A DNA stretch of 63,748 bases. Origin: Gekko japonicus. Lineage: Eukaryota. The stretch spans positions 1-63,748 of the forward strand of contig NW_015169788.1 in assembly GCF_001447785.1 (NCBI RefSeq), read 5' to 3'. Position 1 is the first letter of the stretch; each line of letters begins with the position of its first letter. The notes below the pieces were generated by a model. It was given only the letters and a program-made list of their open reading frames with translations, made no database searches and was not told the DNA's origin. The position numbers and the translations under genes are program-made. Positions 18,291 to 57,700 of this stretch are shown in pieces.

Positions 18291-27016
<8,726 letters not shown>

Positions 27017-28244
27017 GGCTGGCGGGCTGCGGCGCAAGCGAAGCCTGTGGAGCCCGGATGAATCGGGCAGTGTCTGCCGCGTGGATGAATGAGCCTTTTA
27101 CGGCTCCTGCCCCTGCTCCGGCTCCCTCCCCGGGGACAGCCAGGAATGCGCAGCCGGCGGCGCTTTGCAGCAGCAGCAACAGCCTCCTCCCGGCCAGGCG
27201 ACGGTGCGGGGGAAAGCCGACTCCCTCCCGCCAATTATTGCGGGATCGGGGGGGGGGCAGTTGGAGTGCAGTTATGGGCTGGGGGAGTTACGTATGTGTA
27301 TATATAGGTTAAGCTAGCTTCATCCACGGAGTGGTATCGCCTTTCCGGCACTGCCAGAGAATGGCCACTGGAGGGCACAGGGCTAACCCGCAACGCCGTC
27401 CCTCCGGCAATGGTGTGGCCTCCCCCCCCTTTGGTCTGTTGCAGCAAGAAGGAAAAGGGAGTCCTGTGTTGTCGCAGAAGAACACCAGAACTTATGCTGC
27501 AGCACACATCTGTTAGGCTTCAGGGTGCAACAAGACACCGTTCAGGCATAGAATCGCCTCAGGTTAGACACAGACTAGGGGAAAATACAGTCCCTGCTTT
27601 TTCTGGAGACAGAACTTCTTCAAAGCCCGGCATTGCTCATACATATTACATTTCCAGGCACATTCCTTGCTCTCCGGCTGGGTTTATAGTAAGAGGAAGG
27701 CTAGCCTGCCCATCTCCCAGGGCTTTGTTGTTTGCAGATGTTGTGATGGGTAATTAGGGAGGAGCTCAGTGGTGGAGCATCTGCTTGGCAAGCAGAAAGC
27801 CTCAGCTTCAATCCCCAGCATCTCCAGTTAAGAATCCGGGAACCACTGCCAGTCTGAGTAAGACAGCATTGATCTTGAGGGACTAAGGTTATGATTCAGT
27901 CTAAGGCAGCTCAGCATGATATAGTGGTTAAAGTGTCAGACTAAGATATGGGAAATCCAGGTTCGAATCCCCACTTGTGGCATGGAAGCTTAGTGGGTGA
28001 CCTTGGGCCAGCCATACACTCTCCGCCTAACCTATCTCACAGCGTTGTTGTGAGGATAAGATGAAGGAGAGAAGGATGTAAAGATACTTTGGGTCCCCAT
28101 TGGGGTGAAACTCAGAATGTAAATAAATAAATGTGATCAGGTATAATAGTAAGTGTGTAAGAAAGGCAATTGTGGTGCACTGCTTATTTGGGGGGACTGT
28201 TTCCCCTTTAAAATTATTCTTTGTGTAATAAACTGGGTAGTTTC

Positions 28245-29340
28245 TGCTGCCACCAGGAATTTTAAGAAATTCCAAATCTTCTCTGTTTCTGCTGTTGGTA
28301 ATGTGACCCAGGGCCTGGGCTTTCAAAGGCCTATGTGGCCCTGAGGAACTGAATTCTGGGTTAAACTTAAACAAAATATGATTTATTGATTAAGGAATAA
28401 AAATAAGTTGCTAGTTAACTGTAGTTTTTGGGGAAAGGAACTGGTAAATAAACTGGCAAGGTATCACACACAGTCTTTTGACATTAAGATCCCACTCTGA
28501 CAGGAATCTCTCACATAGGCAGCCACACTGGCTAAGCTCTTTGTATTATTGACTCTCTTTCATAACTTCAGAGTCTCACAGACCCTTCTCATTTAAACTC
28601 TTAAAGCCGTATATACTGAACTCTGAATCAAACCGGGTTCTTCAGATTAGAGTCTGGCACTGTGACCATACCCCTCTTTTATTTTGTGTGGTTATGTGTG
28701 ATGTAGTTTTAAATTTCTTGTTTCTTTATCTCACTCAAAGTATCTATCGCTGCCACCAGGAATTTAATCCCAGTCTTTCATTAACCTTTCCCACAGTATT
28801 GTGCCCAAGCTCCTTCATTGGACTATGTGGTTCTGAGGATAAGACTCTGGGTTTACAATAAACAAGATAAAACTTTATTGGTAAGAGAAGTGTATTGGTT
28901 ACAAGATGTTTTTGTTAAGTTGCTTAGTAGAATCTTTCACTTTTTACTCAGGTCTCTTGTCAGCTTTCCCCCCTCACACACTTATAATACTCTGACAATA
29001 TTAGATTTTGCCTGATATGCCCCCTCAAGTATATTTTCTTCCTCCTTTAGAATCTTAATGCCTTTCACAGCACTTCTGTATGATTCTAATGAGAAGGCTG
29101 CTTCTCAGACTCTGTAGATTGACCACAGCTGCTGACTTCTGACTTCAAACTCAAACTGAACATTCTGCCTTCTCTACACACGTGCACACCTCCTAGCTCC
29201 ACACACACACTCAGTCACCAACAAATCACCTCACTCACTCATCTCCTCCTTTCACCCCCTTGTTCTACTGACACCAACCATCTTAAAGAAACACACACAT
29301 ATAACTTGAAATCATTACAGGCACTCTTAATCATTACACC
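28245..29340. repeat. Two diverged copies of an LTR-like repeat
   Basis: Both begin gctgccaccaggaattt (~28247, ~28749) and share ctatgtgg..ctgagga..ctgggtt..aaacaa..tttatt; class uncertain. Confidence 0.4.
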
Positions 29341-30234
29341 ACACTGGCTAGCAGCCCAACTGGCAGCCTCTTCCACAGTAGTCATAACTGTATCACCAAT
29401 CATGATGTTATTCGCTGAGAATGTACCACATCATCCATGTACGGAAATGAACACTGAGGTGATGCAATTTTCACAGTGCCGTATCTTCTCCTCTAACATA
29501 ATGTGCAAGCCAGCTGCCAGAGAAAAACAAGCTCTTGTTCCTGTCCCCCTAGTAAAGGTTTCCATAGCCCAATAGACTGGGAAAGAAGATCACAATGCCA
29601 AACAGGAAAGGTAGGTTCAGTTCTTGTTCCTTGAAGACAGTGAGAAGACCATAACAAGGCAAATACTACCTTTTGGGTGCCATGCTGGCACCAGTAATGA
29701 AGACTGGGAAAGAGAGAAGCAATAGGATTAGAACCCAAAATAGACTATAGAGAGCAGCTCCTTAACACCACATTCACAAGAGAAACAAAAAAATCATGAC
29801 CTTTGTAGTTTTCTAGAGTGTTGCCTGAAACCCCCTTCTATGCTTAGGAGCCAGAGTACCCAGTCCAATACCAAAAGGGCCTTATTCCAGATTCTAACTC
29901 AGGAAAATGCAGGCTTCCATATAACAAGCTCCAGGTTCTATCCCCCAACTGTACATGTAGTGATAAGGGTTGCAGCACACAAGTGGTAACCAGAAGAGGA
30001 GTCAAGAGACTGAGCACTGGACATGCCCCCCATCACTTGCACTGGTGACTGTAACAAGATAGCCCTTTGGGGAAGGTGAGCCCACTGCCACCCCCTCATC
30101 ATGAAGACCATGCGTGCGCACACACACATTTGTGTCAAGTTGCACCCAACTTATGGAGACCTCCATAGGGTTTTCAAGGCAAGACACTAATAGGTGGTTT
30201 GCCATTGCCTTCCACTGTGTAGCAACCCTGAACA

Positions 30235-31679
30235 ACATAAGTCCAACACACTGTCACACAGTGGCCAAAAATACCAGGTGCCATCAGGAGGTCCAGCAGT
30301 GTGGCCAGGACACTAGAAGCCCTCCCACTGTTCCCCCCCCCCTCCAAGCACCAAGAATACAGAGCATCACTTGCCCCAGACTGAGAGTTTCTATCTATAC
30401 CTTGTGGCTAATAGCCACTGATGGACTTCTGTTCCATATGCTTATCTAATTCCCTCTTGAAGCTGTCCGTGCTTGTAGCCGCCACCACCTCCTGTGGCAG
30501 TGAATTCCATGTGTTAATCACTCTTTGGGTGAAGAAGTACTTAGAATCATAGAATGTTAGAGTTGGAAGGGACCTTGCAGGTCATTTAGTCCAACCCCCT
30601 ACACTCTGCAGGAGTATACTGAAAGATAGCCCTACACACCTACAACAGTACTCCAATAGAACAGAGTAAAAATTACAAATATTTGGGTCTAATATTCAGT
30701 GAAACCTTGAGCTGGAATGCCCAAATTGCTTCCTTAAAATCTTCAGCAAATAAGATCATTGGTGTGGTACTGAGATTCTGTTACAACAAGGGAGGTCTAC
30801 TAATAGATCCAGCCCTTAAACATTTTGTCAGCAAAGTAATCTCACATAGAATGTTACAGTTGGAAGGGACCTTGCAGGTCATGTAGTCCAACCCTGTCCA
30901 ACCATTCTGCAAGAGCATAGCCGAAAGATAATAGTCCTACAACATACCCGAAAGATGGTTGTCCAGCCTCTGCTTGAAAACGTCCAGCGAAGGAGCATCC
31001 ACCACCTCCCGAGGCAGACCGTTCCACTGCTCAACCACTCTTACAGTTAGGAAGTTTTCCCTGATATTTAGCCGGTATCGGCTCCCTTGTCATTTCCACC
31101 CTTTAGATCTAGTCTTGCAATCTGGAGTGAGAGAGAATAGATCTGCTCCATCTTCTACATGACAGCCCTTCAAATACTTGAAGACTGCAATCATGTCCCC
31201 TCTAAGCCTTCTCTTTCCCAGGCTAAACACATCCAACTCTTCCAGCCTTTCCTCATAAGACTTGGATTCCAACCCTCTCACCATCTTGGTTGCCCTCTTC
31301 TGGACACGGTCGAGCTTGTCAACACCCTTCCTAAAATGGGGGCCAAAACTGGACACAGGACTCCAGGTGAGGCCTGACCATAGCAGAATAGAGTGGAACG
31401 ACCACCTCCCGTGAACTGGACACAAGGCTTTTGTTAATGCATTCGAAGATTGCATTAGCTTTCTTCGCAGTCACATCGCACTGCAGGCTCACGTTTAGCT
31501 TGTGATCAACCAGAACACTTAGATCCCTTTCACATGTGCTGCTCTCAAGCCAAGTCCCTCCCGTTCTATATCTGTGCCTTTGATTTTTTGTACCTAAGTG
31601 TAGGACTTTGCACTTCTCTCTATTGAAGTTCATTTTATTTGTCTCAGCCCACTGTTCCAGCCTATCTAGGTAATTTTGA
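30235..31679 (-). mobile_element. Cluster of CR1 LINE 3' fragments
   Basis: Minus-strand peptides LDRLEQWAETNKMNFNREKCKVLHLG, PLYSAMVRPHLESCVQFW, KRRLRGDMIAVFKYLKG; tagaatcatagaat tail motif at ~30542; CR1 homology stops at ~31679. Confidence 0.9.
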
Positions 31680-33144
31680 TATATTACTATATGGTATATA
31701 CTGTATATGGTATAGAACTTTGGGGGTTGAAAGAACAAACATATGTTATGATAAAACAATTTAATCCAATATGTAGTGAATTATAGGGGCTCGATAGAAT
31801 TTGTAAACGTATGCCCCGGTTGAGTTAAGAAGGAGGCCATTTGGGAGTTCCATTATTTGTTCCCTTCTGATAAATGGTTATCTGACCAAATTGATAGGTT
31901 GTCAGCTCTTGAAGAAGGGTCTTCTTGAAACGGTCTTTGGGATTTGCTGAGCTGATGGTAGATTTCTGCTTGAAGCCCTCGTTCCAAGCACCACGGGAGA
32001 CCTCCCTGGAGACACTGCACGTAGAGGAGGACTTCAGCTCATATATTGTGTATCACGTACTCATAATTCGGTGGTCCTTAAATCGTTCACGCCAATTGCT
32101 TTTTGGATTCTCCGTGCCTTGCGTAATATGTTCAGATATCTTCTACCTTGTATGTTTATAAATGCTATCGAATCCCTATTATTAATTCACTGTGTGTTGG
32201 ATGAAATTGTTTGATTGTAACATATGCGATATATGGTTAGTTAGCTTGCTTCACGGTGTTCTTAACAGCTAACTATAGCATCCAACTGTGATCCCCATTT
32301 GAATTTTGCTTGTTCCTTGAGAATCAGCAGCCGGGGCAAAGGGCGGGGATGGTCTGTTGCTCTCAGCAGAGCGTTCAGCTAAGCCAGAGTCCGGTTTCTG
32401 AAGAAATGACACCCTGCGGGGAGGGGGGAACAGAGGCCGCTTCCCTGTCCCCAAGGGGGTGGGGGGCAGTGACAGACCAGGGGGCCGGCAGCAACAGACT
32501 GGGGGGGCCAGGGTCATGCGTAGGGTGTTGCAGGGCTGGCTCCAGAAAATCCCTTCCCCGAGCAGTCGTCTGTGCCCCCTGCATGGAGCAGGATGAGGAG
32601 GGGGTGCCCTCGGCCAACTCATACGCCCTGAATTGTCCCCCCCCCCTTGGCCCCACTCTCCCCTGGTGGGCCCTCCAGCTGCTGCTGCTGGCCTGATTGG
32701 AGACCTTCCTCTCCCCTTATGGGGGGTGGCGCAGGAAACGCCCCCCGGCTCTGTTCCCACAGCTGTTGTGCAGGGTGTGTGGTGGATCTGGCACTGGGGG
32801 CGTGAGGCCGAGTGTCCTCTGGGAGGTGCCACCCAAGGAAGGTGCCCCTGATGCAACCCAGAGGTCGGGCTGATCTGAGGCCACACTCTCTTCTCCCCGG
32901 TGGGGCCCCCAGCATGGTTCTCCCCTCCTCCCTTGTATCCTCCTCACAACCACCCTGCGAGGAAGGTTTTGCTGAGGGTAGGAGGACTGGCCCGAGGCCA
33001 CCCAGGCAGCAGGGGGCGGGACCTGGGGATCCCAAGCCCTGATCTAACCACAAACCCAGCCGTCAGCAAAGAGGGCGGTGGGTGTGGACTAGGGGAGGCC
33101 CATACAAGCGGTGGTATAAATGTTTGACTGGCTGAAGCACTGAG

Positions 33145-34555
33145 GAAGAAGAGAAGAAGAGATTGGATTCATACCCCATGGCCCTTCACCACCCGAAGGA
33201 GTCTCCGAGTGGCTGACAAACGCCTCCCCCTTCCCCTCCCCACAACAGACAGACACCCTGTGAGGTAGGTGGGGCTGAGAGAGCTCTTTCCAGAGCTGCC
33301 CTTGAGAGAACAGCTCTTATCAGAACCACGGCTTGCCCACGGTCACATCAGCAGGTGCGAGTGGAGGAGTGGGGAATCAAACCCAGTTCACGCAGATTAT
33401 AGAGTCCGCGCACTTAACCACCACACCAAACTGGCTCTCAAGAAGAAGAAGAGGAGGAGGAGGAGGATGGATTCATACCCCATGGCCCTTCACTACCCGA
33501 AGGAGTCTCAGAGCGGCTGACAAACTCCTTCCCCTTCCCCTCCCCTCCCCTCCCCACAACAGACACCCTCCGGTGAGGGAGGCGGGGCTGAGAGAGCTCT
33601 GACAGGAACTGCTCTTTTTCCAAGGACAGCTCTTATCAGGACTACAGCTTGCCCAAGGTCACCCAGCCAGGTGCAAGTGGAGGAGGGGGGGATCCAACCC
33701 GGTTCTCCCAGATTAGAGTCCAAACACTGAACCACGACACCAAACTGGCTCTGAAGTGTGCCTGTCCTGACCCTGTGCCTCTTGTGGGGCAGCCAGCGAC
33801 TTCTTCCAGACCGAAGGGGCCCTTCCTGTCCTGGTGGGCCCTGGGCCCACGCTCCTTGGGGGTCTCACGCGTGCTGTGACGGGTGGGCTCTTCAGTCTCG
33901 TTCCTCCAAAGAGCTGAGGGCTCTTTCGCCTCCCCTCCGCCATTTCATCTTCCTGTGCGTCAGGCCGGGCCAGGCGTGAGCCAAGGTCCTCTGGTCTGCT
34001 TCCAGGTGGTTGCTCGGAGAGCTTGGCCTTGCGGGTTCGTGAGAGGTGGAAGGGAGAAGACCTCAGGACAAAATGGTGGGGGCTGCCTCTGCCTCCCTTT
34101 GGGTGTCGCGGTGAAGTGCGCGGACTCTAATCTGGGAGAGCCGGGTTTGATTCCCCCACTCCTCCACTCACACCTGGCTGGGTGACCTTGGGCAAGCCCT
34201 TAGTTCTGACAAGAGCTGTCCTTGAAAAAAGACCAGTTTCTGTCAGAGCTCTCTCAGCCCCACCTCCCTCCCAGGCTGCCCCTCCCAGTTTGGTGTCGTG
34301 GTCAAGTGCGCAGACTCTAATCTAGGAGGACTGAGTTTGATTCCCCATTCCTCCACTTGCGCCTGGCTGGATGACCTTGGGCAAGCCATAGTTCTGTCAG
34401 AGCTGTTCTTGAAAAGAGCATTTTCTCACAGAGCTCTCTCAGCCCCGCCTACCGGGTGTCTGTTGTGGGGAGGGGAAAGGAGTTTGTCAGCCGCTCTGAG
34501 ACACCTTTGGGTAGTGAAGGGCGGGGGATAAATCCAATCTCCTCTTCTTCCTCTC
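33145..34555. mobile_element. Cluster of Squam3-like tRNA-derived SINEs (two minus-strand copies 33145-33750, two plus-strand copies 34100-34555)
   Basis: tRNA-like head (tggtgtcgtggtcaagtgcgcagactctaatct...gtttgattcccc), shared body, (TCT/TCC)n tails. Confidence 0.8.
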
Positions 34556-35152
34556 AACCGCCCCCCCCCCAGCTCCCTGGACTCTCCTCCCTGCATTCCT
34601 TGGTATCTCCCTTATTGCAGGCAGGCGACTTCTGGTCGCTAAAGGTTTGGAGGCAAAACATCTGAGCCACCATCTCCTCCTCCTCATGCTGAGGCCGTGT
34701 CAGACTCCCCGTCAAGTTACTCTCAACAACACTCTGTTTGGCAGTGATGCGTTTATTGAGATATGTGCATGATCCAGAACAGCGCTTGTGTTAGAACTGA
34801 AGTTTTTTGGCGGGCATAATGCTTAATATAGGTTGTTCAAACAGATCCCTGTTCCCTTCCCCCATGTACACGTCACAAGTACCCGCCTAGTGTTGCCATC
34901 TCAACCAAAAGGAAAATACATGGTTTGGTTATCTACTGCTCAAGCTCGTACCAGGAGCTTCAAGGACACCTTTCCCTGGGAATTGCGGGAAAAATCATGG
35001 CGCCTAAAAGCAAAGGTTCTCACTCTCTCCCCTCCCCGTAGCAAGCGAAGCAAAGCGAGGTTTGACGGGTGGCTCTCATGGCCTGGCTTGGGCCGGGTGC
35101 TCTCCCACCAGGCCTGCCCCTTGCTCCTCCGCCTCTGTCTCCTCCCACGCAG

Positions 35153-38100
35153 GCCCTGGAGCAGGAGCGGTGGCAGAACTTCCAGCAGCTGTGCCAGCTG
35201 GACGAAGAGGCCCTGGTCCCCACCCAGGAGGCAACGGAGTGCCGCATCTGCTACCTCGACGTGGAGCCGGGCGAGGGGGTGCTGCTGCGGGAATGCCTGC
35301 ACAGCTTCTGCAGGTGAGGTGCACCTGTGCCGCTGCCGCTGCCTGGGGAGGGGTGGGGCAGGGGGAGAGGAGGATGGGCGGCCGGAAGCCTGACGCGAGC
35401 GCATCCCCTTCCCCGGCCAGGGACTGTCTGCGGCAGCTGATCAACTGCAGCGAGGAGCCCCAGGTGGCCTGCCCCTTCCGGGACGACAGCTACGCCTGCA
35501 GCAGCCATCTCCAGGATCGAGAGATCCGGGCGGTGAGTGGCCCTCCCTGCAGCCTGGGCTACTGTGCCCTGAGAGAGAGAGCTGGGCCCTGTAGGGTGGC
35601 CGGCAAGCCGCTGGAGATACTACGGAGCGGTCTCCCTTCCTGGCCCAACTCAGGATGGCCTGGAGGACTGCTGGGTTCTGTGTTGTCCCTCGCCTGTCGG
35701 GATAGAGAAGTTGCTCATCGTAAAAAAAGCCCCGGCCCCTGGGTCCAAGCCTGCTGGGTCTTTGGACTTGGGAGTCCTGTCCCCCAGCCCCTGGCTACCT
35801 CTACCCCCCCCCGGGACACTGAAGCAGCGCCTCTGTCTCCGCAGCTGGTGTCGCGGGAGGAGTACGAGCGTTTCCTGGAGAGGAGGCTGGCGGTGGCAGA
35901 GAGCCGCGCCCAGAACAGCTACCACTGCCAGACGGCCGACTGCCTGGGCTGGTGCATCTACGAGGACGACGTCAACGACTTCCGCTGCCCCATCTGCTGT
36001 GCGCTCAACTGCCTGGTCTGCAAGGTGAGCGGAGGGCGGCCACGGCCGGTGGAAGGCAAAGACCTTCCTGGCTCATGTCCCCTTCCCAGCTTTCAGCAGA
36101 CCCATGTGAAGGGGACACCGGAAGAGCTGGGGCTGCCTCAGGCCTGCCTCATCCAGCCTCCTGTTTCCCACGACAGCTGAAAGAGCTGCCACGGAGGGCC
36201 CGGCCTGCCCCTGATGTTTCTTCCTAGCACTGCCTGGGTGACGGAGGTTTACTGCCCTTGGATGGGGAGGTTCCCTTGGCAATGGAGGGACTCTGCCTGG
36301 CTCCCTTTCAAAGTCATCCGTGCTTCTGGCCGGGAGGACATCCACTGGCAGAGAATCTCACCACTGAATTGCTGTTGCGTACAGAAATGATTCTTTTGGT
36401 CTGCCCTGAACCGGCTGGGTGCCCCCACCTTCTGGAACCATGTGAGCAGGAGACAGAGCTCTCTCTGCGTCAACTCCTTCCATTCTACAAACTCCCCTCA
36501 CGTCCCTTTTCCCCACGGGAAAGCTGCTGCAACCCCTTAAGGGCGTTGGTGGCCCCCTTCGGCCTTTCTGCAATACCCATTCTGAGTCCCCTGTGTCCGC
36601 CTGTTTGGGAATGGTCCAGGAGCCTGTTTCTTGGGGACCTGGTCTCACAGCAGCTGCAGGGCTGCCTGCTGACCTCCTAGACAGCCAGTGGGGTTCTGGG
36701 CCCCAGTCTCCCCCGAAACCATATCAGCAGGGGTCATTTCCTGCAGGAGCGGAGCTCCGGCAGTAAAGAGCCCAGGGGGCGGGCACATGCAACAAGCCCC
36801 GCCCCCTGCTCCCAGCAGCCCTCAGTCAGAGAAGAAGCAGAGCCCCCCCCCCGGCCCGCCTTCAGGTACGAGCTCTCCCTCCTCTGCCAGGACAGATCTG
36901 CACACTTCCCTCCACCCCAATAGCTAGCAATCCAAAACAGTCCAGTGGAGCCTGAGCAGTGGGTGTTGCCTTCTGACACACTTCCGGTGATGTCAGGGGG
37001 TGTGGCATATGTAAATAAGTTATGCTAATGAGTTATGCTAATGAGTTCCTGCACCTCTTTTTCTATGAAATGACCCCTGCATATCAGCATCCCGTAGGGG
37101 TTGCTCTTAGAGTTGCCAGCCTCCAGGTGGGGCCTGGGGATCTCCCGCTTTTACCACTGATCCCCAGCTGAAAGAGATCAGCTCCCCTGGAGAAAATGGC
37201 TGCTTTGAAGGGTGGACTCCATGGCATTGTACTATGCTGAGGCCCCTCCCCTCCCCAAACCACACCCTCTCCTGGCTCCACCCCCAAAGTCTTCAGGTAT
37301 TTTCCAACCCAGACTTGGCAACCCTAGTTGTTCTTAGCCAGGAGAAGAGAGAAGAGACAACCAGGCAGTGATCCAGCTGAAGTCGTTAAGGCAGCTGCAT
37401 CCTTGGCAGAGTCAACCAGAGGTGACCGCGGCCTTTTCCAAAGGCAGCGGAGATGCTGGCTCCACACCTGAAGAGGGCGTGCCCTCTCCCTCGCACTCCC
37501 CTTCCCCACTTAGGGAATAGGCTGAAGGGACACAAGCCCACGCGGCCTCCTCATTCCATTTGACCTCCTTTTGTTCTTCCCGGGTTCTTGGACCCCGAGT
37601 CCAAACCGCAGAAATGGCTCGGTGGGATGGGGGCGCCCACGGGAAGGGAGCCCAAAGAAAGTGAGCCCCTTTTCTCAACCGCAGGCCATTCACGAGGGGA
37701 TGAACTGCAAGCAGTACCAGGACAAACTGCAGTTCCAGGCCCAGAATGATGCCGCGGCCCGGGAGACCAGCAACATGCTCAAGGTGAGTGGCAGCTGAGG
37801 GCCCTCTGGCTGGCATGGGGCTGGCCAGCGGCTCCTTCACCCTCCTTTGCAAAAAGTGGCTTATCTCGTGTGGAATGCAGTCGCATCAGGCTACACGGCC
37901 CGTAGAGAAAGCAGGCCTTCCGTAGACCTCAGAGGCCAGGAAGAGATGTGAGAAGAGCCCTGCTGGATCAGGCCAGCAGTCCCATCTAGTTCAGCAACCT
38001 CATTCATCCAGTGGCCAGCCAGTTAATCAGGAGGACCAACCACAGGGCATAGAGTCCGAGGCCTTCCGCTGAGGTTGTCTCCTGGCTCTGGGATTTGGAA

Positions 38101-41100
38101 GTCGACTGCCTCTGAATGTGATTCCCCTCAGTCACCATGGCTGATGGCTGCTGACAGACCACTCCTCCATGACTAACCTCCTTTTAAAGCTATCTGTGCC
38201 TCTGGCCATCACTACGTCCTCTGGCAAGGCATTCCACATTTTAATCACTCTCTGTGTAAATTAGTATTTCCTTTTGTTCATCCTGAACCTACTGCCCAGT
38301 GGATGCTCTTGAGTCCTAGAAAAGTCCCATCTGTTCACTCTCCACCCCATGCGTAATTTTATAAACCTCTGTCATGTCTCCCCCTTTAGTCGTCTCTCTT
38401 CTCAACTGAAAAGTCCCAGACTCTTCTTCAGCCTGTTCCTCCTAGGGAAGGGGCTCCAACCCCCTCCTCATCTTGGTTGCCCTCCTCTGTCCTTGTTCCA
38501 GCTCTGCCATGTCCCCTTGGAGATACGGAGACCAGAACTGTGCACACAGTATTCCTCAAATGAGGCCGCACCCTAGGTGTAGGCATTGTCATTTTGGCTG
38601 TTTTATTCTCAATCCCTTTCCTAATAATCCCCAACACAGAGTTCGTCCCTTTCGCTGCTGCTGCATGCTGGATTGACATTTTTTGGGGGGGGGGGGGGAA
38701 GGGGGTTTTTTTAAAAAAATTTTTTTTTTAAAAAAAAAAAAAAAAAAANNNNNNNNNNNNNNNNNNNNNNNNNNNNNNNNNNNNNNNNNNNNNNNNNNNN
38801 NNNNNNNNNNNNNNNNNNNNNNNNNNNNNNNNNNNNNNNNNNNNNNNNNNNNNNNNNNNNNNNNNNNNNNNNNNNNNNNNNNNNNNNNNNNNNNNNNNNN
38901 NNNNNNNNNNNNNNNNNNNNNNNNNNNNNNNNNNNNNNNNNNNNNNNNNNNNNNNNNNNNNNNNNNNNNNNNNNNNNNNNNNNNNNNNNNNNNNNNNNNN
39001 NNNNNNNNNNNNNNNNNNNNNNNNNNNNNNNNNNNNNNNNNNNNNNNNNNNNNNNNNNNNNNNNNNNNNNNNNNNNNNNNNNNNNNNNNNNNNNNNNNNN
39101 NNNNNNNNNNNNNNNNNNTCTTTCCCTCTCAGTCTCAAGAAGGTTCAGACTCCATTCGCCTGGACTTGGGAGTCAGGATTTCTGGTTCCAGTGCGCATCG
39201 CTTTACACATACCTACACTAAACATTTTCCATATTGTTGCCCACTCGCCCGATTTGTGGAGACCCTCCCTCCTGGACCTCTTCACAGTCAGCCTTGGTTT
39301 TAACTGTCCTAAATAACTTTGTGGGACAAAAAGGGGAGGGGAGAAACCGAACCTAGAAACCTGGGATCCAGAACCTGAAAAGGTTAGTCAAATAGAAAAG
39401 AGGGCCAACAATAAAAGCTTAATATATATAGTATATAAAAAGATGCGTGTATTTATTAACAAAGAATTTTAAAAATATATAAGGGCCCAATGTAAAAATA
39501 CCAGAATCTAACACACGAGGGCCAATGGACTTGACCTGACGTGTTTTGGCCTGCGTAGGCCTTCTTCAGGGGGTCTGCCCTAATTCCAGGTGCTTTGTGA
39601 CCCCAATGCTCTCTTCCCTCCTCCCTGAGAACTGCCCATTTATTTCTCCCTGTTTGCTTCCTGTCATTTAACCAGTTCTTAATCCATAGGAGAACCTGCC
39701 CTCTTATCCAAGGGCTGTTGAGCTTGGTGAGGCACCCTTCACTCAGCGTCTCAGAGCGGCTGACAAACTCCTTTCCCTTCCCCTCCCCACAACAGACACC
39801 CTTTGAGGTCGGTGGGGCTGAGACAGCTCTTGACAGAAACGGCTCTTTTTCAAGGACAGCTCTTGTCAGAACTACGGCTTGCCCAAGGTCATCCAGCAGG
39901 TGCAAGTGGAGGAGTGGGGAATCAAACCTGGTTCTCCCAGATTAGAGTCCGTGCACTTAACCACGACACCAAACTGGCTCCCTACTGTAGAAACTTTGTC
40001 CCCCCTGCCCCTCAATGCCTAACAATTCTGCCTTTGATTACAGCTTCTTCTTGGTGCCCGCCTGGTCTGTTTTTTGTGGCTGGGCTCCGTTTCCTGCCAG
40101 GCCGCCTGTAACTGCTTCTCCCCCCCCCTTCCCCCTTCCAGATGCTGGTGCAACTGGGGGAGGCCATGCACTGCCCCGTCTGCCGCATCGTGGTCCAGAA
40201 GAAGGGCGGCTGCGACTGGCTCCGCTGCCCCGTCTGCCAGACCGAGATCTGCTGGGTGACCAAAGGGCCCCGCTGGGGGCCAGGGGTGAGCATGCCGGGC
40301 GGGGGAGACCAGTTGGAGCAGAGGGCCAATCAGTGGGTGGCCAGAGGCCTCCCCACCCCCCCACCCCACTAGCCAAATTCTGCACCAGGAACAGGCTGGC
40401 ACCAGTGTTCCCTCTAAACTGAGTCAGTGTTAACTAGTTCACAGTGTTTTAGCCTCCGGCTCACGCATTTTTCTCTTAGCTCAGAGCAAGCTATTTGATG
40501 CAGCAGCCAAGTCGCTCACTGACAACTTTAATGCCAGTTGCTCCCAGAGTAGGATTTTTGCTCACAAGACACCACAGCTTAGAGGGAACATTGGCTGGCA
40601 CTGCAAGCCGCCCTGCCTCCCTGGCACAGGGCCTGCCCCTTTGCCAGCCTTGTCCGATGGTTCTGCGGCGAGTGGGTGCCGCGTTGCCCCCTCCTTGCTT
40701 GCCCCTTTATTTTTTTTCCTGTCTCATTTCTTGCCCGGAACGGCTGATTTCCTCCTCCTCTACATCTGAAGCTGCCTTATGAGACCCCCCCCCCCCCCGG
40801 GTTGGGGGGGGCCGGGGGGAGTGAGGCTCCCCGGGGTGTCGGGCGGAGGCTTGTCTGAGCGCCTGCCGCCTGCTCCTTTAAATAGCGGGGGGCTGAGCCC
40901 AGCCAGGCCTTCTGCACGCACAGTGGCAGCCGAGGGCCTGAGCCATGATCCCCGGAGGGGCTTGGGGGATTCACTGCCACAGCAGGGCACCAAGGAAACG
41001 TTTGTAGACATCGGAATCTCTTACTCCTTCCCGGGTCCTGTAGGTGTCGCCTGTACAGAGTGCTGGTTCGGCGTTTTTCTAAAAGCCTTGTTTATAGCCC

Positions 41101-42672
41101 AGCCCTGTGACTGGAAAGTTATACTTGGAAGGGCAGGGCCAGTGCCTGGTGAGGCTCGGGAGGGAGGGAGGGGGCGGGGCTCTGCATTGCAAAAGAAAAG
41201 TTGCACTTGAGAGGGTCGCAAGTGCAGTTTGTCTTGGCGTCAAATTCTGGCATGCCTCTCCAGCCAGGGGCATTGAGGCGAGAGAGGGAGCCATGCAGGA
41301 GGTGGCAGCAAACACTTCCTGAGGAAAGGGCTTCCCACCTGCCCAGCCTCGCCTCCTCGGCGCTGACCCATAGAGAGACCTGAAACTGGGGGCTGCTTTG
41401 TTAATTGCTGGCTGAACGTTTCATTTTCATCTCTTATTAGGATGCTTCATTTGGGTCTGTTAGCTGCCTTGGGTAGTTTCGAAGAGAACGGTGGGAAATA
41501 CCATGTGAGACCAAACCATATCATAGCACAGGATGTAAGCTGTCAAGCTCTCCAAAATGTTCCTGCAGGCTGGATGTTATTGGGGGGAGGGTGTCCCCCT
41601 TTCAGATGGAGAACCTGAGAATTGACAGCTTCCTTCTCTGCGCAAGCCGGGTTCTTTTCAAGGCTGGGGAAGGACGTGTAAGGTTAACAGTCCTGACATG
41701 TAGAAAAGAGTCCAGTAGCACCTTAAAGACTTAACAAAATTTGTGGCAGAGTATGAGCTTCTGTGAGTCCCTGCTCACTTTTTCCAGTATCACTTTTCCT
41801 AATATCTCAGAGTGATTTCATATGCCGAATGACAATAGCAGGCATAATTGGATACTAGATGTGATAATGTAGAGAGGCAAGTAGGGGTGGAGAAATGAGC
41901 ATTGGTAATGAGACGGGAAACCTAGGTCTCAGTTCAGTCCAGGAGGATTCACTGCCTTGCGCTTCATTATCAGTTGCAATTCCTTTGTAAGAGAACTGCT
42001 ACTTGTAGGTCAGCAGCTGAATGTCCTGGAAGGTTAAAATGTTCCCCCCACTGGTTTTTGAACATTGTGGTTTCTAAAGTCAGACTTCTGTCCATTTATT
42101 CTTTGTCATATAGACTGGCCTGTCTGTCCAGTGTAGAGGGTGGAAGGGCATTGCTGATACGTGATGGCATAAATCACATCAGAGGATGAGCAGGAGTCGG
42201 AACCTGAGATGGTCTGGCTGGTGTTGCAGGCCTTGGTACCAGAGTCCATGTTACTGTTGCTTAACCTTGCGGGTGAAAAGTTGTTGAGTTCTGAGCTGTA
42301 TGTGACCACCAGTGGTGTCCTGTTGTCATTTTCTTTGGGCTTCTTGTTCTCACCATATCAGGAGGACACTGTAGTTGCAAGAATGCCTGTTGTAGATCCT
42401 TCAAGTGAGTATCTCTGACTGAGGGGTTAGACCTGATGTGACTGTGTCGGGCTTGGCTACAGACATTGGATTGTTTGGTGTGGTTGGGATGGTTGCTGGA
42501 GGCTGACCTGTCACCTTCTGGTGTAGTGTGGTGCTTGTGTGTCCTGGCATGCTTTGACCCACCCCGATGCGTTCATTCTCCTTCCCTGCAGGGTCCTGGG
42601 GACACCAGCGGAGGCTGCCGGTGCAACGCAGATGGGCAGAGGTGCCACCCCAATTGTCAGAACTGCCACTGA
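35153..42672 (+). CDS. SHARPIN: HOIL-1L/RBCK1-like RBR (RING1-IBR-RING2) E3 ubiquitin ligase at the SHARPIN locus; last 6 coding exons only
   Basis: Exons 35153-35313, 35421-35532, 35845-36024, 37685-37783, 40142-40285, 42592-42672 (161/112/180/99/144/81 nt), GT-AG, in frame: [83 protein letters not shown]. The sequence is RBCK1-like; the symbol is inferred only from tail-to-tail synteny with CYC1-GPAA1. AATAAA at 43070. Confidence 0.8.
36728..37079. mobile_element. Non-autonomous hAT DNA transposon (related copy ~56987-57346)
   Basis: TIRs caggggtcatttc / gaaatgacccctg; 8-bp TSD catatcag. Confidence 0.85.
37945..38680 (-). mobile_element. CR1 LINE 3' fragment
   Basis: Peptide [27 protein letters not shown]; 3' UTR shared with copies at ~11320, ~30235, ~52472 and ~59270. 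Confidence 0.75.
38749..39118. other. Assembly gap (N run) with low-quality homopolymer left flank
   Basis: 370 Ns; 38680-38748 consists of pure homopolymer runs. Confidence 0.99.
40403..40593. mobile_element. ~200-bp hAT MITE (copies also at 49311-49493, 52944-53151, 55645-55852, 60889-61094, 63504-63709)
   Basis: TIR cagtgttccctctaa ... ttagagggaaca(c/t)tg; 8-bp TSDs gctggcac, cctgggag, cccaccag, ctc(g/a)gcac, gccatgag. Confidence 0.9.
41700..42480 (-). mobile_element. Decayed Penelope-like retroelement (GIY-YIG region plus terminal repeat)
   Basis: Minus-strand peptide [27 protein letters not shown] (GIY-YIG), GLN.DLGF.SHYQC-like end, Penelope terminal sequence agagtccagtagcaccttaaagact. 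Confidence 0.8.
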
Positions 42673-43431
42673 GCACCTGCTGCCAGGAGAGAAAGACACA
42701 GCCCCCCCCCCGCCCGAACTACTGTGGGTGGGGCTTCGCTGGAGACTGAGGATCCTCCCTCCCTCCCAGGTCTTCCCACACTGGACTTTTTAACCCTGTA
42801 GTGGCTGACGAATGCATCCTCCATCCAGAGCTGGGGTGGAGGCTGATCTTCCCCCAAAGGGTGGCACCCCCACAAACAAGCGTCAGGGGCGGGTCAGTTC
42901 TCCCGGGCGCCCTTCCTCCCCCTTCCCTTTCTGCACCACCCTGATCTCATGCCAAGGGCACGGACGCCCCCAGCCCCTGGACAGAGAGAACAGGGGCCCA
43001 GGCAGGAGAGCGGGGCCGCGGAAGGGCTCGAGATGTACATTGCTGCACAGACGGGCGGAAGACCCATTCAATAAAGGTGTAAACACTGTGAATCTGCTGG
43101 AGCTGTTTTCGGGGACTGGGGGCAGGGTGCCGAGGGTCACCGTCCTCTCTCCCAGGCGCACCACCCTGCCTGCTCGCGGCTGGATTTCAAGACAGAGGCC
43201 GGTCTGGTTGAAGACATGTGTTTATTGGGCACCTGCCACCCCTGGGTTCCCAGGGTCCCTTCCCAAGGCTTCACGGGTGACTGCACGGATGGAGAGACGT
43301 TAAATAACAGAAACCGCACTGGAGAGGAGCGCCCGTCCGCCTGCCAGCCCGTACGTACATTCCCAGGGCGGCAGAGGCGGTGCCCCTCAGGCAGTAGAGG
43401 TCGGTCGGTCGGTCCAGGCCCCCTGGACAGG

Positions 43432-46773
<3,342 letters not shown>

Positions 46774-48361: not shown

Positions 48362-48567
48362 NNNNNNNNNNNNNNNNNNNNNNNNNNNNNNNNNNNNNNN
48401 NNNNNNNNNNNNNNNNNNNNNNNNNNNNNNNNNNNNNNNNNNNNNNNNNNNNNNNNNNNNNNNNNNNNNNNNNNNNNNNNNNNNNNNNNNNNNNNNNNNN
48501 NNNNNNNNNNNNNNNNNNNNNNNNNNNNNNNNNNNNNNNNNNNNNNNNNNNNNNNNNNNNNNNNNNN
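48362..48567. other. Assembly gap in the CYC1 CpG island
   Basis: 206 Ns flanked by extremely GC-rich sequence. Confidence 0.99.
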
Positions 48568-54700: not shown

Positions 54701-57700
54701 CCCCGTCGTCTCCCAGGCAGTCACTTAACAGAAGCAAACGGCAGCAGGGCCCCCAAGCGTTTGGGGCGTGTGGGCAGAAGGACCCGCACAGCCCAGGGAC
54801 TGACCCCGCTGGTGGCCACGGCAAGCCCTGCCCCGGGGCAATCCACCAGGAGCGCACTACCCGCCACGCACCTCTGCCGCCATGGGGCCTCCGTCACAAG
54901 ACTGGTCCGCAGGGTCCACGTCGCATCGGCTCAGCTTCATCCACAGATCCAGAGCGTGGGGAAAGAATCAAGGGGGAAAGACCCACACAAGCTTGCGTGT
55001 CCCAGACGAAAGCTCGACCCAGCCGGGCCCTTCCTCCACTGCCCCGCGGAGGAGCCCCGTCTGCTGCTGTGACCTGCCTGCCCTGCAAAGTCCGGGGGGG
55101 GGGGCGCCCACCGGAAGACAGGTGGCTCTCCTGCCCACTTCTGGTGCTAACAACCCCGATAAGCAGGTTAGGCTGAGACTCACTGGAGGCTCAGAAAACT
55201 TCAGGGCGGGCCAGGGACGCCCACATGGAATGCCCAGATCCGAGTCTGACTGATTCGCACACCTTTTGCAGTCCTCAGACCCAGCTCAAGGGGTGCTGGG
55301 GGGGGGACCCCATGTCATGACACTGCCCCCCACCCCCACCTTGCGTCAGGGCTCCCCTGGGATCTGTCCGAACACCTGCCACCAGCTGGGATGGAGGCTG
55401 CCTTCCATCCCCGGCAGAACNNNNNNNNNNGGTGTCGCTCTTTCTAGTCTTGTGGGGGGCCTGAGGCTGGATCCCGTCTCTTTTTGCCGCGACACCATCT
55501 GGAAACATGACCGTCCAGCTGCATGGGAGGGAGGGCCTGGGTGGAGGCCGCGAGGCAGGAGACTGAGAAACCGCTGGAGCCAAACCTCTTCTTCCCACCT
55601 CACTGAACCCTCCCTGACTTTTGATGGAGGACGGCCCTCGGCACCAGTGTTCCCTCTTAAGCTGAGTGAGCGTGAGCTAGCTCACCGTTTTTTAGCCTCC
55701 GGCTCACACCATTTTTGTCTCAGCTCAGGCAGGAGGGCTCCAGGGCAAACGAATTCATGCAGCAGCCGAATCGCTTGCTCACAACTTTCATGGCAGTCGC
55801 TCACAGAGTAGCATGTTCGCTCCCCAGACTCCACAGCTTAGAGGGAGCACTGCTCAGCACCCCTCGCGCCTTTGCCCTCGGAGGGCCTCTGGGGTCCCGT
55901 CCTGCTGGCCGGTGTGGAGCTCAGCAACCAGCTGGCTCTCCCCTCGCCACGTCTGCTGGCAGCCCCCACCCCCGGCTGGCTGGGCACCCCTCTCTTCCGG
56001 GAGCAGCCAGCCCAGCAGGGTGGGAGGCGACAGTCCCTCCCTCCTCCCCCGGAGCTGCCGGCCACCAGCACATCGAGGGCGCGTGGACTGCGCCCGCCCG
56101 ACTATCACAGGGCTGGAAGGCTCCCCCCCTCCCCCAACGTGACGGAGCAGCCCGGTTCCGGATCGAAGGCAGTAAGAGCCAGGACTGCCCCCCCCCCCCC
56201 GCCCCACTCTGTCCGCAGGATATCTTCAAGACGAGGATGAGGATGAGGAAGCCGAAGGCCGGCATGTAGACCCCGATGGAGACGAAGCGGGAGAGCGAGG
56301 GCAGCAGGTAGAAGAAGTAGGACTGGTGTAGGCGTTCCAGCAGGTTGTTCAGCTTCCGGAACATTCCCTCCAGCGTTCTGGGGAGGAAGGCCAAGAGTAT
56401 GGGGGACCACATCACCCCCTCCTGAACCCGCTCGTCAGCACCTCCGCCCCCCCGGGCATCCTGCTGCCCCCTCGGCCCCATGACCGGCTGGCTGGCACAC
56501 TCACTTGCCCACGGCGCCCATGTCGTACTTGTACTGGCGGAAGCTGTTGATGCCCCGCACCGTGACGGCCTCGATGTGGTAGCGCAGAAAGAGGCCGTGG
56601 TCACCCTGCGGCCGGCCAGAGCCCTGCTTGAGCACCATCAGGAGCAGCGTCTGCAGAGAGTGCAGGTAGGCCGGCAGCGAGTCCCAGTCGGAACGCTGCA
56701 GCTGCGTTTTTGGGGGTGGAAAGCGGAGGGGCGGGGTCAGCCAGGCCTGGGGACAGAGCAGCCCCCTGGCCCAGGCCCCCCCCTTCCCTGCCCCTCCCGG
56801 ACCGGCCACCGGGAACCCAAGGAGCCTGCCCAGGGGCTCAGCGGCAAGGGAGGGTCCCGCACGGTCCAGCCAGGAACCGTCCGCTCTGCAGCCACTCTCA
56901 GTTCGTGGGCTTGCGCAGGCAGACAGCTGGAGGGACCCTGGACTGGCCGGGGCCTTCGGGCTCCTGATAGCGTCCCTTCCCCCCCCCTAGGTCATTTCCC
57001 AGAAAAAGAGGTGCAGGAGCTCATTTGCATATGCCACACACCCTGACAAAGGGCAGGCATGTTTAAAATGAGTTATACACATGAGTTTAAATCCCCACCC
57101 CCCACCCTGAGTCTCTCTGCAAAAGTGGAGAGGCTCAGGGGGAAAGGGAGGCAGTCGTGCCTGGGTTCCCTGCCCGCTGTTCTCCAGGTGCCCTGTGGCT
57201 GCGGAGCACCTGGAGAAGAGCCGGCAGGGAACCCAGGTATTTAAGTCCCCCCCTCCCTGAGAGTCTCCGCGGGCGGGGGGGGCGGGGCTTGGACTCTTTT
57301 CTGCCGGAGTGCCGCTCCAGGGCACTCCGGCAGGAAATGACCCCTGTCCACCCCCCACGTGTCCCTTCACCTTTCCCTGGATGGTGCAGAGGAGGTTGCT
57401 CTTCTGGCAGAAGGCGTAGAAGAGGTTGACCAGGTCCAGGTTGGGCAGCTGCCCGTTCAGGCCCTCCACGGCCAGGTCAAAGCTGGTGATGACGTCGCTG
57501 CTCAGCTCCAGGGAGACGGCGGCCTGGATGGCTCCGGCCCGGCCCAGCATCCCCGACGACTGGATCTCTGGGGAAGAAGCGAGAGGCCCAGCTGGTGAGG
57601 GGCTGCCTGGCACAGATCTATCCCCGGAAGAACACCCGGGCACACAAGGGGGGCTGCCCCAGTGACATTCGTTCTGCTCTCTTATGCCCCGCTTTTCTCT

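What the first reader, a model, noticed from the sequence alone, without database searches (positions are those of the whole stretch)
35153..42672. SHARPIN-position gene that retains a complete HOIL-1L-type RBR ligase with its catalytic residues
Seen: six spliceable in-frame exons encode RING1-IBR-RING2 with [10 protein letters not shown] (catalytic Cys equivalent to HOIL-1L C460) and the C-terminal CQNCH* (H510 equivalent). The gene is tail-to-tail with CYC1, next to GPAA1. Known: in human the order is GPAA1>CYC1><SHARPIN, mammalian SHARPIN ends after its NZF and has no RBR, and RBCK1 lies elsewhere (20p13). A SHARPIN/RBCK1-related gene is annotated in fish. Inference: this reptile SHARPIN orthologue keeps the ancestral RBR, so squamate LUBAC may have a third catalytic subunit, possibly with HOIL-1L-like oxyester (Ser/Thr/glycan) ubiquitylation activity that mammals lost.
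Basis: partly seen in the sequence, partly recalled or inferred. Interest (0 to 1): 0.8.

Follow-up and report, generated by a model that had tools for sequence, protein, structure and literature searches.

The report
Gecko SHARPIN gene's RBR ligase half
These six exons are the intact, HOIL-1L-like ubiquitin-ligase (RBR) half of the gecko SHARPIN gene, a domain that mammals lost but that public annotations already show in SHARPIN of nearly all other jawed vertebrates; in this assembly the other half of the gene is missing.

Summary
Six + strand exons (35153-42672) have canonical AG/GT borders and splice in frame. They give 258 codons encoding RING1-IBR-RING2, with every known HOIL-1L catalytic residue kept. 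The N gap lies inside intron 4 and hides no coding sequence.

The product is 100% identical to RefSeq XP_015272444.1 (Gekko japonicus "RBCK1-like").

The RBR does not belong to true RBCK1. It sits at 99/99 support in the clade of ~700-aa PH-LTM-UBL-NZF-RBR proteins. NCBI already names these "sharpin" in squamates, turtles and birds, and "RBCK1(-like)" in amphibians, coelacanth, sharks and fishes. Sharks and teleosts also have a separate ~520-aa RBCK1 without a PH domain. Synteny with CYC1 and GPAA1 holds.

So "the SHARPIN orthologue keeps an ancestral RBR" is right, but it is general and already annotated. I found no paper that discusses it.

The PH-LTM-UBL-NZF exons are absent from the whole window. 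SLC25A32 and CTHRC1 lie upstream instead. The LUBAC-tethering part is therefore not linked to the RBR here. I could not tell a real rearrangement from a misassembly.

Whether squamates also have a separate RBCK1 was not tested.

In passing: a conserved alternative 3' exon gives a short, mammal-like SHARPIN isoform across vertebrates.

The parts
35153..35313 (+). RBR exon 1: C-terminal part of the pre-RING1 helix and the first half of RING1 (ALEQERW...CLHSFCR)
   Evidence: AG acceptor and GT donor. Pfam RING hits. tblastn at 98% to gecko sharpins.
35421..35532 (+). RBR exon 2: second half of RING1
   Evidence: AG/GT borders. The splice 35531->35844 is seen in three RNA-seq runs and in the X1 contig.
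35845..36024 (+). RBR exon 3: RING1-IBR helix and IBR
   Evidence: Pfam IBR hit. 95-100% identical to gecko sharpins. RNA depth of 3-7x with empty flanking introns.
37685..37783 (+). RBR exon 4: end of the IBR and the IBR-RING2 helix ([12 protein letters not shown]...NMLK)
   Evidence: AG/GT borders. Present in the spliced X1 contig.
38749..39118 (.). Assembly gap (N run) inside intron 4
   Evidence: no orthologue has residues between exon 4 and exon 5. The gap was not filled.
40142..40285 (+). RBR exon 5: RING2 with the catalytic Cys ([10 protein letters not shown]), plus the W462 and E471 equivalents
42592..42672 (+). RBR exon 6: Zn2/Cys6 region, C-terminal His (H510 equivalent) and the TGA stop
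34561..35152 (+). Stretch upstream of exon 1 that is continuous with exon 1 in one spliced transcript contig. It is either a leader or a retained intron end. It holds 8 upstream ATGs and an in-frame ATG at 35078.
   Evidence: X1 record 3. ATG scan and CpG profile.
31955..32062 (+). Non-homologous 5' exon used by the RefSeq model XP_015272444.1 (its first 34 residues, then the donor)
   Evidence: tblastn of P0001. RNA depth is only about 1x and no supporting splice was listed.
43432..43536 (-). Last coding exon of CYC1 (context: tail to tail, 759 nt from the RBR stop)
   Evidence: ORF ...[19 protein letters not shown]. Pfam Cytochrom_C1 on an upstream exon.
26582..27037 (-). First coding exon of CTHRC1, in the only CpG island of the region (context: the upstream neighbour where the SHARPIN 5' half would be expected)
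   Evidence: ORFs. Pfam Collagen and CTHRC1_C on the exon at 20661-20924. CpG profile.

Best explanation
The six exons are the 3' module of the gecko orthologue of SHARPIN, in its long isoform (PH-LTM-UBL-NZF-helix-RING1-IBR-RING2). They encode a complete HOIL-1L-type RBR ubiquitin ligase.

Inferred mechanism: RING1 binds a ubiquitin-loaded E2 such as UbcH7. Ubiquitin is passed to the RING2 cysteine that corresponds to C460. It is then discharged onto a hydroxyl group (Ser/Thr or sugar), with the C-terminal histidine acting as general base, as in human HOIL-1L.

SHARPIN and RBCK1 are paralogues that separated before sharks and bony vertebrates diverged. Both began with an RBR, and mammalian SHARPIN later lost it.

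Shown here: the exon structure, the residue conservation, the placement in the tree, the synteny, and splicing of the exons in RNA.

Inferred, not shown: catalytic activity, oxyester specificity and membership of LUBAC.

In this assembly the 5' half of the gene is not next to the RBR half, so what the RBR is attached to in Gekko remains open.
For: Exon structure and frame.

The product is identical to RefSeq XP_015272444.1.

P0001 aligns without gaps to the human HOIL-1L helix-RBR at E = 1.2e-113. The equivalents of C460, W462, E471 and H510 and the cluster cysteines are kept. Their roles come from PMC9834252 and PMC11962058.

Tree of 58 RBR modules: PH-type clade 99/99, no-PH RBCK1 clade 99/87. 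The window lies inside geckos (99/98) and squamates (100/100).

Full-length PH+LTM+UBL+NZF+RBR 'sharpin' exists in Paroedura, Heteronotia, Eublepharis and Sphaerodactylus, and from sharks to birds.

Three shark species (Carcharodon, Mustelus, Scyliorhinus) carry both paralogues on different scaffolds.

Anchors to human proteins by bit score: the PH-type LTM-UBL is closer to human SHARPIN (132 v 105 bits for Rhineura; 110 v 100 for shark). The no-PH shark protein is closer to human HOIL-1L (126 v 92).

The gene lies tail to tail with CYC1, with GPAA1 beyond.

RNA: a spliced contig joins exons 1 to 4, the 35531->35844 splice is seen in three runs, and the introns are empty.

The Gekko RBR branch is the shortest among the geckos (0-0.009 substitutions per site), which indicates purifying selection.
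Against: No PH, LTM, UBL or NZF exon lies anywhere in the window, nor does the conserved short-isoform tail exon. SLC25A32 (+) and CTHRC1 (-) occupy the upstream 35 kb.

One transcript contig, and the read depth in run X21, run through the 35153 acceptor instead of splicing into it.

Expression is very low, at 1-7x.

The tree holds no mammalian RBCK1. The human anchor is by PDB bit scores only, and the RBRs of both shark paralogues score alike against human HOIL-1L (419 v 423 bits).

Activity, substrate and HOIP binding are untested.
Confidence: 0.88

Rival explanations
1. The gene is really split in Gekko. An intrachromosomal rearrangement with one breakpoint in the intron before the RING1 exon moved the RBR half next to CTHRC1. 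The RBR is then transcribed by itself and gives a protein of about 283-292 aa with no LTM or UBL and only half of the activating helix. Such a protein could not be tethered to HOIP in the canonical way. The N half would persist elsewhere as a mammal-like SHARPIN.
For: Eight kb of gap-free sequence joins exon 1 to the CTHRC1 promoter side. SLC25A32 and CTHRC1 keep a tail-to-tail order.

GC switches from 0.39-0.43 to 0.56-0.67 at 32.2-32.4 kb. RNA reads from 2026 runs tile across 32097-32490.

The X1 contig and the X21 depth read through the 35153 acceptor.

In G. japonicus RefSeq the N half (XP_015275509.1, 463 aa) lies on a separate 30-kb scaffold, and the RBR model starts with a non-homologous exon.
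Against: The 463-aa protein is simply the short isoform, which is conserved from fishes to birds. It says nothing about a split.

The G. kuhli N-half and RBR-half models have consecutive accessions (KAL8181425 and KAL8181424) on one 129.8-Mb scaffold.

Four other gecko genera have the full-length gene.

The RBR shows no relaxation of constraint.

The read-through leader has 8 upstream ATGs and no CpG island.

Runs X22 and X23 show exon 1 covered with nothing upstream of it.

The window carries estimated-length N gaps, which is typical of a short-read scaffold. It matches the RefSeq model exactly, so it may be the same assembly and therefore not independent support.
Confidence: 0.35
2. This is an assembly artefact or an unresolved join. 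The gene is intact in the animal, and the sequence upstream of about 33-35 kb was wrongly joined at a repeat.
For: SINE-like high-copy blocks at 33082-33870 and 34067-34657, and a CR1-like element at 31.0-31.8 kb, sit between exon 1 and the CTHRC1 block.

The N half is on an orphan 30-kb scaffold.

The two halves have consecutive accessions in G. kuhli.

The RBR is strongly conserved.
Against: There is no N gap between 27 and 35 kb.

RNA reads from independent samples cover the composition switch.

I have no direct evidence of a misjoin.
Confidence: 0.45
3. This is a translocated true RBCK1, or a decaying relic or pseudogene of an RBR.
For: NCBI calls the product 'RBCK1-like'. Expression is very low.
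Against: The RBR lies in the PH-type clade at 99/99 and is only 61% identical to shark RBCK1, against 72% to the shark PH type.

All splice sites, the reading frame, the zinc ligands and the catalytic residues are intact.

The Gekko branch is the shortest among the geckos.

The exons are correctly spliced in RNA.
Confidence: 0.04

Closest known systems
RefSeq 'sharpin' long isoforms of other geckos and sauropsids (for example Paroedura picta P0076, Heteronotia binoei P0077, Eublepharis macularius P0075; about 690-740 aa)
   Same: The RBR module is 95-97% identical, with the same exon junctions and no indels. It falls in the same clade.
   Different: Those proteins carry the Sharpin_PH, LTM, UBL and NZF domains in front of the RBR. 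In this window those exons are absent.
Gekko japonicus XP_015272444.1 'RBCK1-like' (P0001)
   Same: Identical over all 258 RBR residues. It is the existing annotation of this locus.
   Different: The model adds a 34-residue non-homologous N terminus from 31955-32056. The RNA laid here did not clearly support that exon.
Human HOIL-1L/RBCK1 RBR (PDB 8EAZ, 7YUJ, 8BVL, 9EGV)
   Same: RING1-IBR-RING2 aligns without gaps (382.6 bits). C460, W462, E471, H510 and the Zn2/Cys6 cysteines are kept. I358 at the allosteric ubiquitin site is replaced conservatively by Leu.
   Different: It is the paralogue, not the orthologue. His469 of HOIL-1L is Gln in all six sauropsid SHARPINs whose RING2 I read. HOIL-1L has no PH domain.
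Mammalian SHARPIN
   Same: Same chromosomal neighbourhood, tail to tail with CYC1 and next to GPAA1. The N halves of the full-length reptile and shark orthologues (Rhineura, Carcharodon) match the human SHARPIN LTM-UBL better than that of HOIL-1L.
   Different: Mammalian SHARPIN ends soon after the NZF and has no RBR (established knowledge, not tested here).

Membership tests
RBR (RING-between-RING) E3 ligases | RING1 with a C3HC4 zinc-ligand pattern | tested here: met
   Pfam zf-C3HC4 scores 25.3 bits against a cut-off of 21 on P0001. All ligands align to HOIL-1L RING1.
RBR (RING-between-RING) E3 ligases | IBR domain between the two RINGs | tested here: met
   The Pfam IBR score is below its cut-off (17.8-22.8 v 24.3). 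However, the whole IBR aligns without gaps to the solved HOIL-1L IBR.
RBR (RING-between-RING) E3 ligases | RING2 (Rcat) with an active-site cysteine | tested here: met
   In [10 protein letters not shown] the Cys aligns with position 460 of HOIL-1L, which is Ala in the C460A crystal construct.
HOIL-1L-type oxyester-forming RBR | Active site of C460, W462, E471 and the C-terminal H510, plus the Zn2/Cys6 binuclear cluster | tested here: met
   All are conserved in the alignment. The definition comes from PMC9834252 and PMC11962058.
HOIL-1L-type oxyester-forming RBR | Ubiquitylation of Ser/Thr or sugars that is sensitive to hydroxylamine | not testable with these tools
   This needs a biochemical assay.
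HOIL-1L-type oxyester-forming RBR | Complete helix N-terminal to RING1, needed for activation by M1-linked di-ubiquitin | tested here: not met
   Exon 1 starts in the middle of the helix. The first half (...PDEMELWRMQQEKEGILKYQQ) is encoded by an exon that is not in the window.
SHARPIN orthologue (PH-type paralogue) | Position tail to tail with CYC1, next to GPAA1 | tested here: met
SHARPIN orthologue (PH-type paralogue) | Groups with PH-domain-bearing proteins and not with no-PH RBCK1 | tested here: met
   99/99 support in the tree. Identities.
SHARPIN orthologue (PH-type paralogue) | Sharpin_PH, LTM, UBL and NZF encoded in the same gene | tested here: not met
   These exons are absent from the window. 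They are present in a separate G. japonicus protein, P0223, on another scaffold.
LUBAC subunit | LTM/UBL that binds the HOIP UBA; co-purification with HOIP | not testable with these tools
   The LTM and UBL are not linked to the RBR in this assembly. Binding needs an experiment.
True RBCK1/HOIL-1L orthologue | Clusters with no-PH RBCK1; lies next to TBC1D20/TRIB3 | tested here: not met
   It lies outside the RBCK1 clade. Its neighbours are CYC1/GPAA1 and CTHRC1.

The most novel reading that the evidence does not exclude
In non-mammalian jawed vertebrates SHARPIN may be a two-output gene. A conserved alternative 3' exon would give a short adaptor isoform like mammalian SHARPIN. The long isoform would be an active, LUBAC-tethered, HOIL-1L-type O-ubiquitin ligase. 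LUBAC outside mammals would then carry up to three catalytic centres, and mammals would have kept only the short output. In Gekko the two outputs may have been physically separated by a rearrangement, which would be an independent replay of the mammalian loss.
Probability: 0.4. Interest if true: 0.65.

Novelty: new member of a known kind. Interest (0 to 1): 0.4.

Why it matters
The LUBAC field, which works almost entirely in mouse and human, treats SHARPIN as a non-catalytic adaptor.

The sequences show that this is a mammalian derivation. From sharks to birds, SHARPIN carries a second HOIL-1L-type ligase with every catalytic residue intact. It appears to sit alongside a conserved short isoform that resembles the mammalian protein.

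This bears on how zebrafish, Xenopus and chicken knock-downs of 'sharpin' or 'rbck1' are read. It also bears on how oxyester and glycan ubiquitylation evolved.

The data are already public as annotations, and naming is inconsistent: the same orthologue is called sharpin, RBCK1 or RBCK1-like. The value here is in pointing this out and testing it, not in discovering a new gene.

For this locus the practical point is different. The gene is cut in two in the assembly, and that needs to be resolved before any claim is made about Gekko.

Tried and rejected
That includes G. kuhli, other geckos, and RBCK1 loci.
- The search of earlier findings gave nothing for RBCK1, TBC1D20, TRIB3, CSNK2A1 or MAF1 in this genome. 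A separate RBCK1 in this genome could not be checked.
- tblastn of ten full-length squamate and bird sharpins found no N-half exon in the window, even at E = 50. Neither did the G. japonicus and G. kuhli N halves or the 40-residue tail.
- The Logan-derived proteins P0059 and P0228 were unspliced genomic ORFs from other geckos. They say nothing about the 5' end.
- Eight literature searches found no paper that describes an RBR in non-mammalian SHARPIN. Landgraf et al. 2010 (zebrafish Sipl1/Rbck1, PMC3004267) is not held, so I cannot exclude that it mentions this.
- The protein was not left open by the word searches.
Exons were searched by reference. The database protein P0001, which is identical to the conceptual splice, stood in for the joined sequence. 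The joined translation was made only inside scripts, from window.fa, for local pairwise comparison and for the tree.
- No mammalian RBCK1 or SHARPIN sequence could be put in the tree. All three word searches were filled by closer relatives.
- The translocated-RBCK1 and pseudogene readings were rejected (see the rival explanations).


Full report
**1. What is in the sequence**

The + strand between 35153 and 42672 holds six exons: 35153-35313, 35421-35532, 35845-36024, 37685-37783, 40142-40285 and 42592-42672. Each has an AG acceptor and a GT donor. Together they make 777 nt in one frame, ending in TGA.

Searched one by one by reference, they give RING and IBR Pfam signatures. Exon 5 matches the RING2 of human HOIL-1L at E = 2e-22.

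The conceptual product has 258 residues. It is 100% identical to residues 35-292 of P0001, which is RefSeq XP_015272444.1, 'RBCK1-like' of Gekko japonicus. The window is therefore G. japonicus or something indistinguishable from it. The locus is already annotated.

I sent no joined model to any search tool. P0001 served as its referenced stand-in. The joined translation existed only inside scripts, for local comparison and for the tree.

**2. The assembly gap**

The N run 38749-39118 lies inside intron 4 (37784-40141). Exon 4 ends on a full codon (...NMLK) and exon 5 begins MLVQLGE. Every orthologue from geckos to sharks aligns across that junction with no residue missing.

A hidden coding exon is therefore very unlikely. 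This rests on homology, not on the unread letters, which I neither filled nor looked up.

**3. Catalytic equipment**

P0001 aligns without a gap to the human HOIL-1L helix-RBR of PDB 8EAZ (382.6 bits, E = 1.2e-113).

- The Cys of [10 protein letters not shown] falls on position 460, which is Ala in that C460A crystal construct.
- The equivalents of W462 and E471 and the very last residue, H510, are kept.
- All cysteines of the C-terminal region are kept.

According to PMC9834252 and PMC11962058, C460, E471 and H510 form the active site. H510 is needed for O-linked ubiquitylation and blocks discharge onto lysine. The C terminus forms a Zn2/Cys6 cluster that is required for activity.

I358 at the allosteric ubiquitin site is Leu here. 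His469 is Gln, as in all six sauropsid SHARPINs whose RING2 I read.

By sequence, then, this is a competent HOIL-1L-type ligase. Activity itself is inferred.

**4. Which gene it is**

The word searches return well over a hundred proteins of about 690-740 aa with Sharpin_PH (PF16764), LTM (PF25393), ubiquitin-like, RanBP/NZF and RBR domains.

- They are named 'sharpin' in squamates, turtles and birds. The squamates include the geckos Paroedura, Heteronotia, Eublepharis and Sphaerodactylus.
- They are named 'RBCK1' or 'RBCK1-like' in amphibians, coelacanth, sharks, gar, bichir, bowfin and teleosts.

Sharks and teleosts also have a protein of about 520 aa without a PH domain. In Carcharodon, Mustelus and Scyliorhinus the two proteins lie on different scaffolds.

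A maximum-likelihood tree of 58 RBR modules separates a PH-type clade (99/99) from a no-PH clade (99/87). Invertebrate sequences lie outside both. The window falls inside geckos (99/98) and squamates (100/100).

Identities tell the same story: 96.9% to Paroedura, 72% to the shark PH type and 61% to shark RBCK1.

No mammalian sequence was available by id, so I anchored the two clades to human proteins through PDB bit scores.

- The PH-type LTM-UBL is closer to human SHARPIN (132 v 105 bits for Rhineura; 110 v 100 for shark).
- The no-PH shark protein is closer to human HOIL-1L (126 v 92).

Synteny fits. The last CYC1 exon (43432-43536, - strand) is 759 nt from the RBR stop, and GPAA1 follows on the - strand.

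The core inference stands: the SHARPIN orthologue has kept an ancestral RBR, and mammalian SHARPIN is the derived form.

**5. How new this is**

The architecture is already present in RefSeq and UniProt for most non-mammalian jawed vertebrates, and for this very locus. I found no paper in the held library that discusses it.

The one paper likely to mention zebrafish Sipl1 domains (PMC3004267) is not held.

I therefore file it as a member of a known, annotated kind whose biological meaning seems under-appreciated.

**6. What is missing here**

tblastn with ten full-length sharpins finds only the six RBR exons in all 63.7 kb. The same holds for the Gekko N halves and for the conserved short-isoform tail.

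The upstream region holds:

- SLC25A32 (+ strand, about 5-12 kb);
- CTHRC1 (- strand, about 19-27 kb), whose promoter is the only CpG island of the region;
- a CR1-like element;
- a GC switch at 32.2-32.4 kb;
- SINE-like high-copy blocks.

In G. japonicus RefSeq the PH-LTM-UBL-NZF part is a separate 463-aa 'sharpin' (XP_015275509.1, P0223) on a 30-kb scaffold. In G. kuhli the two halves are separate models with consecutive accessions on one 129.8-Mb scaffold.

**7. RNA evidence**

I laid three raw RNA-seq runs of the same species, plus one run held as contigs, on 31900-37800.

- Exons 1 to 4 are spliced together in one contig of 1798 nt.
- The 35531->35844 splice is seen in all three raw runs.
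- Introns 2 and 3 have no reads.
- Expression is very low (1-7x).

The contig, and the depth in run X21, continue 592 nt upstream through the 35153 acceptor. In runs X22 and X23, by contrast, exon 1 is covered with nothing upstream of it.

The read-through stretch has eight upstream ATGs and no CpG island. It looks more like a retained intron end than a true 5' UTR.

However, no read links them to PH/UBL/NZF exons.

**8. Split or misassembly**

For a real rearrangement:

- 8 kb of gap-free sequence runs to the CTHRC1 side.
- Independent RNA reads cover the GC switch.

Against a real rearrangement:

- The two G. kuhli halves have consecutive accessions.
- Four other gecko genera have an intact gene.
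- The Gekko RBR branch is the shortest among the geckos (0-0.009 substitutions per site).
- The window has the character of a short-read scaffold. It matches the RefSeq model exactly, so it may be the same assembly and gives no independent support.

My estimate is about 0.35 for a real split and 0.45 for a misjoin, with the remainder undecided.

If the split is real, the product would lack the LTM, the UBL, and the first half of the helix that PMC9834252 shows is needed for activation by M1-linked di-ubiquitin. It could then hardly be a LUBAC subunit in the canonical sense.

**9. An observation made in passing that changes the picture**

PH-LTM-UBL-NZF-only models of 420-500 aa from geckos, a snake, chicken (sharpin isoform X2), alligator, frogs and teleosts share one feature. 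So do several transcript contigs. They all end in the same tail, placed directly after ...YQQ: (E/G)KGRRE...L(D/E)DF....

This reads as an ancient alternative 3' exon in the intron before the RING1 exon. Non-mammalian SHARPIN would then make both a short, mammal-like adaptor and a long ligase isoform.

It also means that the 463-aa Gekko 'sharpin' is not evidence of a split.

**10. Limits**

- A separate RBCK1 in squamates was not checked, so 'third' catalytic subunit versus 'replacement' stays open.
- No dN/dS could be computed, because no orthologous DNA was available.
- Activity and HOIP binding are untested.

Noticed in passing
not in the window; C termini of P0223, P0173, P0174, P0177, P0182, P0206, P0197, P0205, P0213, P0217, P0219-P0221: Short 'sharpin' models (PH-LTM-UBL-NZF, no RBR) from geckos, a snake, chicken, alligator, frogs and teleosts all end in one shared tail after ...YQQ: (E/G)KGRRE...L(D/E)DF.... 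This looks like an ancient alternative 3' exon that gives a mammal-like short isoform beside the long RBR isoform.
   Followed up: partly
window 27300-35152: The upstream neighbours are SLC25A32 (+, about 5-12 kb) and CTHRC1 (-, about 19-27 kb), not the SHARPIN 5' half. GC switches from 0.39-0.43 to 0.56-0.67 at 32.2-32.4 kb. The only CpG island is the CTHRC1 promoter at 26.6-27.2 kb.
   Followed up: partly
window 33082-33870, 34067-34657, 36628-37415: High-copy SINE-like blocks. The first two are in opposite orientation, shown by 'opposite strands' joints between about 33249 and 34467. RNA-seq depth there is 100-500x against 1-7x on the exons. They limit any read-based test of the 5' end.
   Followed up: no
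window 24922-26442 (-), 2506-4062 (+), 31090-31759 (-): There is an uninterrupted 506-aa reverse-transcriptase ORF inside CTHRC1, and two further LINE/CR1-like fragments. One of them lies just left of the GC switch.
   Followed up: no
window 40142-40285 (RING2): The position of HOIL-1L His469 (CTVCHTEICW) is Gln in this gecko and in all six sauropsid SHARPINs whose RING2 I read ([10 protein letters not shown]). It is His in a teleost PH-type protein. It is probably not a zinc ligand. Its significance is unknown.
   Followed up: no
window 42672-43432: Only 759 nt separate the RBR stop from the CYC1 stop on the other strand. The X1 transcript contig has 648 nt beyond exon 4. The two 3' UTRs may then nearly meet or overlap.
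   Followed up: no
window 57798-57848 (-): A 17-residue tblastn match to the RING2 segment [17 protein letters not shown] (59-65% identity, E = 0.001-0.15) lies in the GPAA1 region. It is probably chance.
   Followed up: no
window 48362-48567 and 55421-55430: Two further N runs. The first lies about 1.6 kb upstream of the first CYC1 exon, between CYC1 and GPAA1. The second is in a GPAA1 intron or exon region.
   Followed up: no
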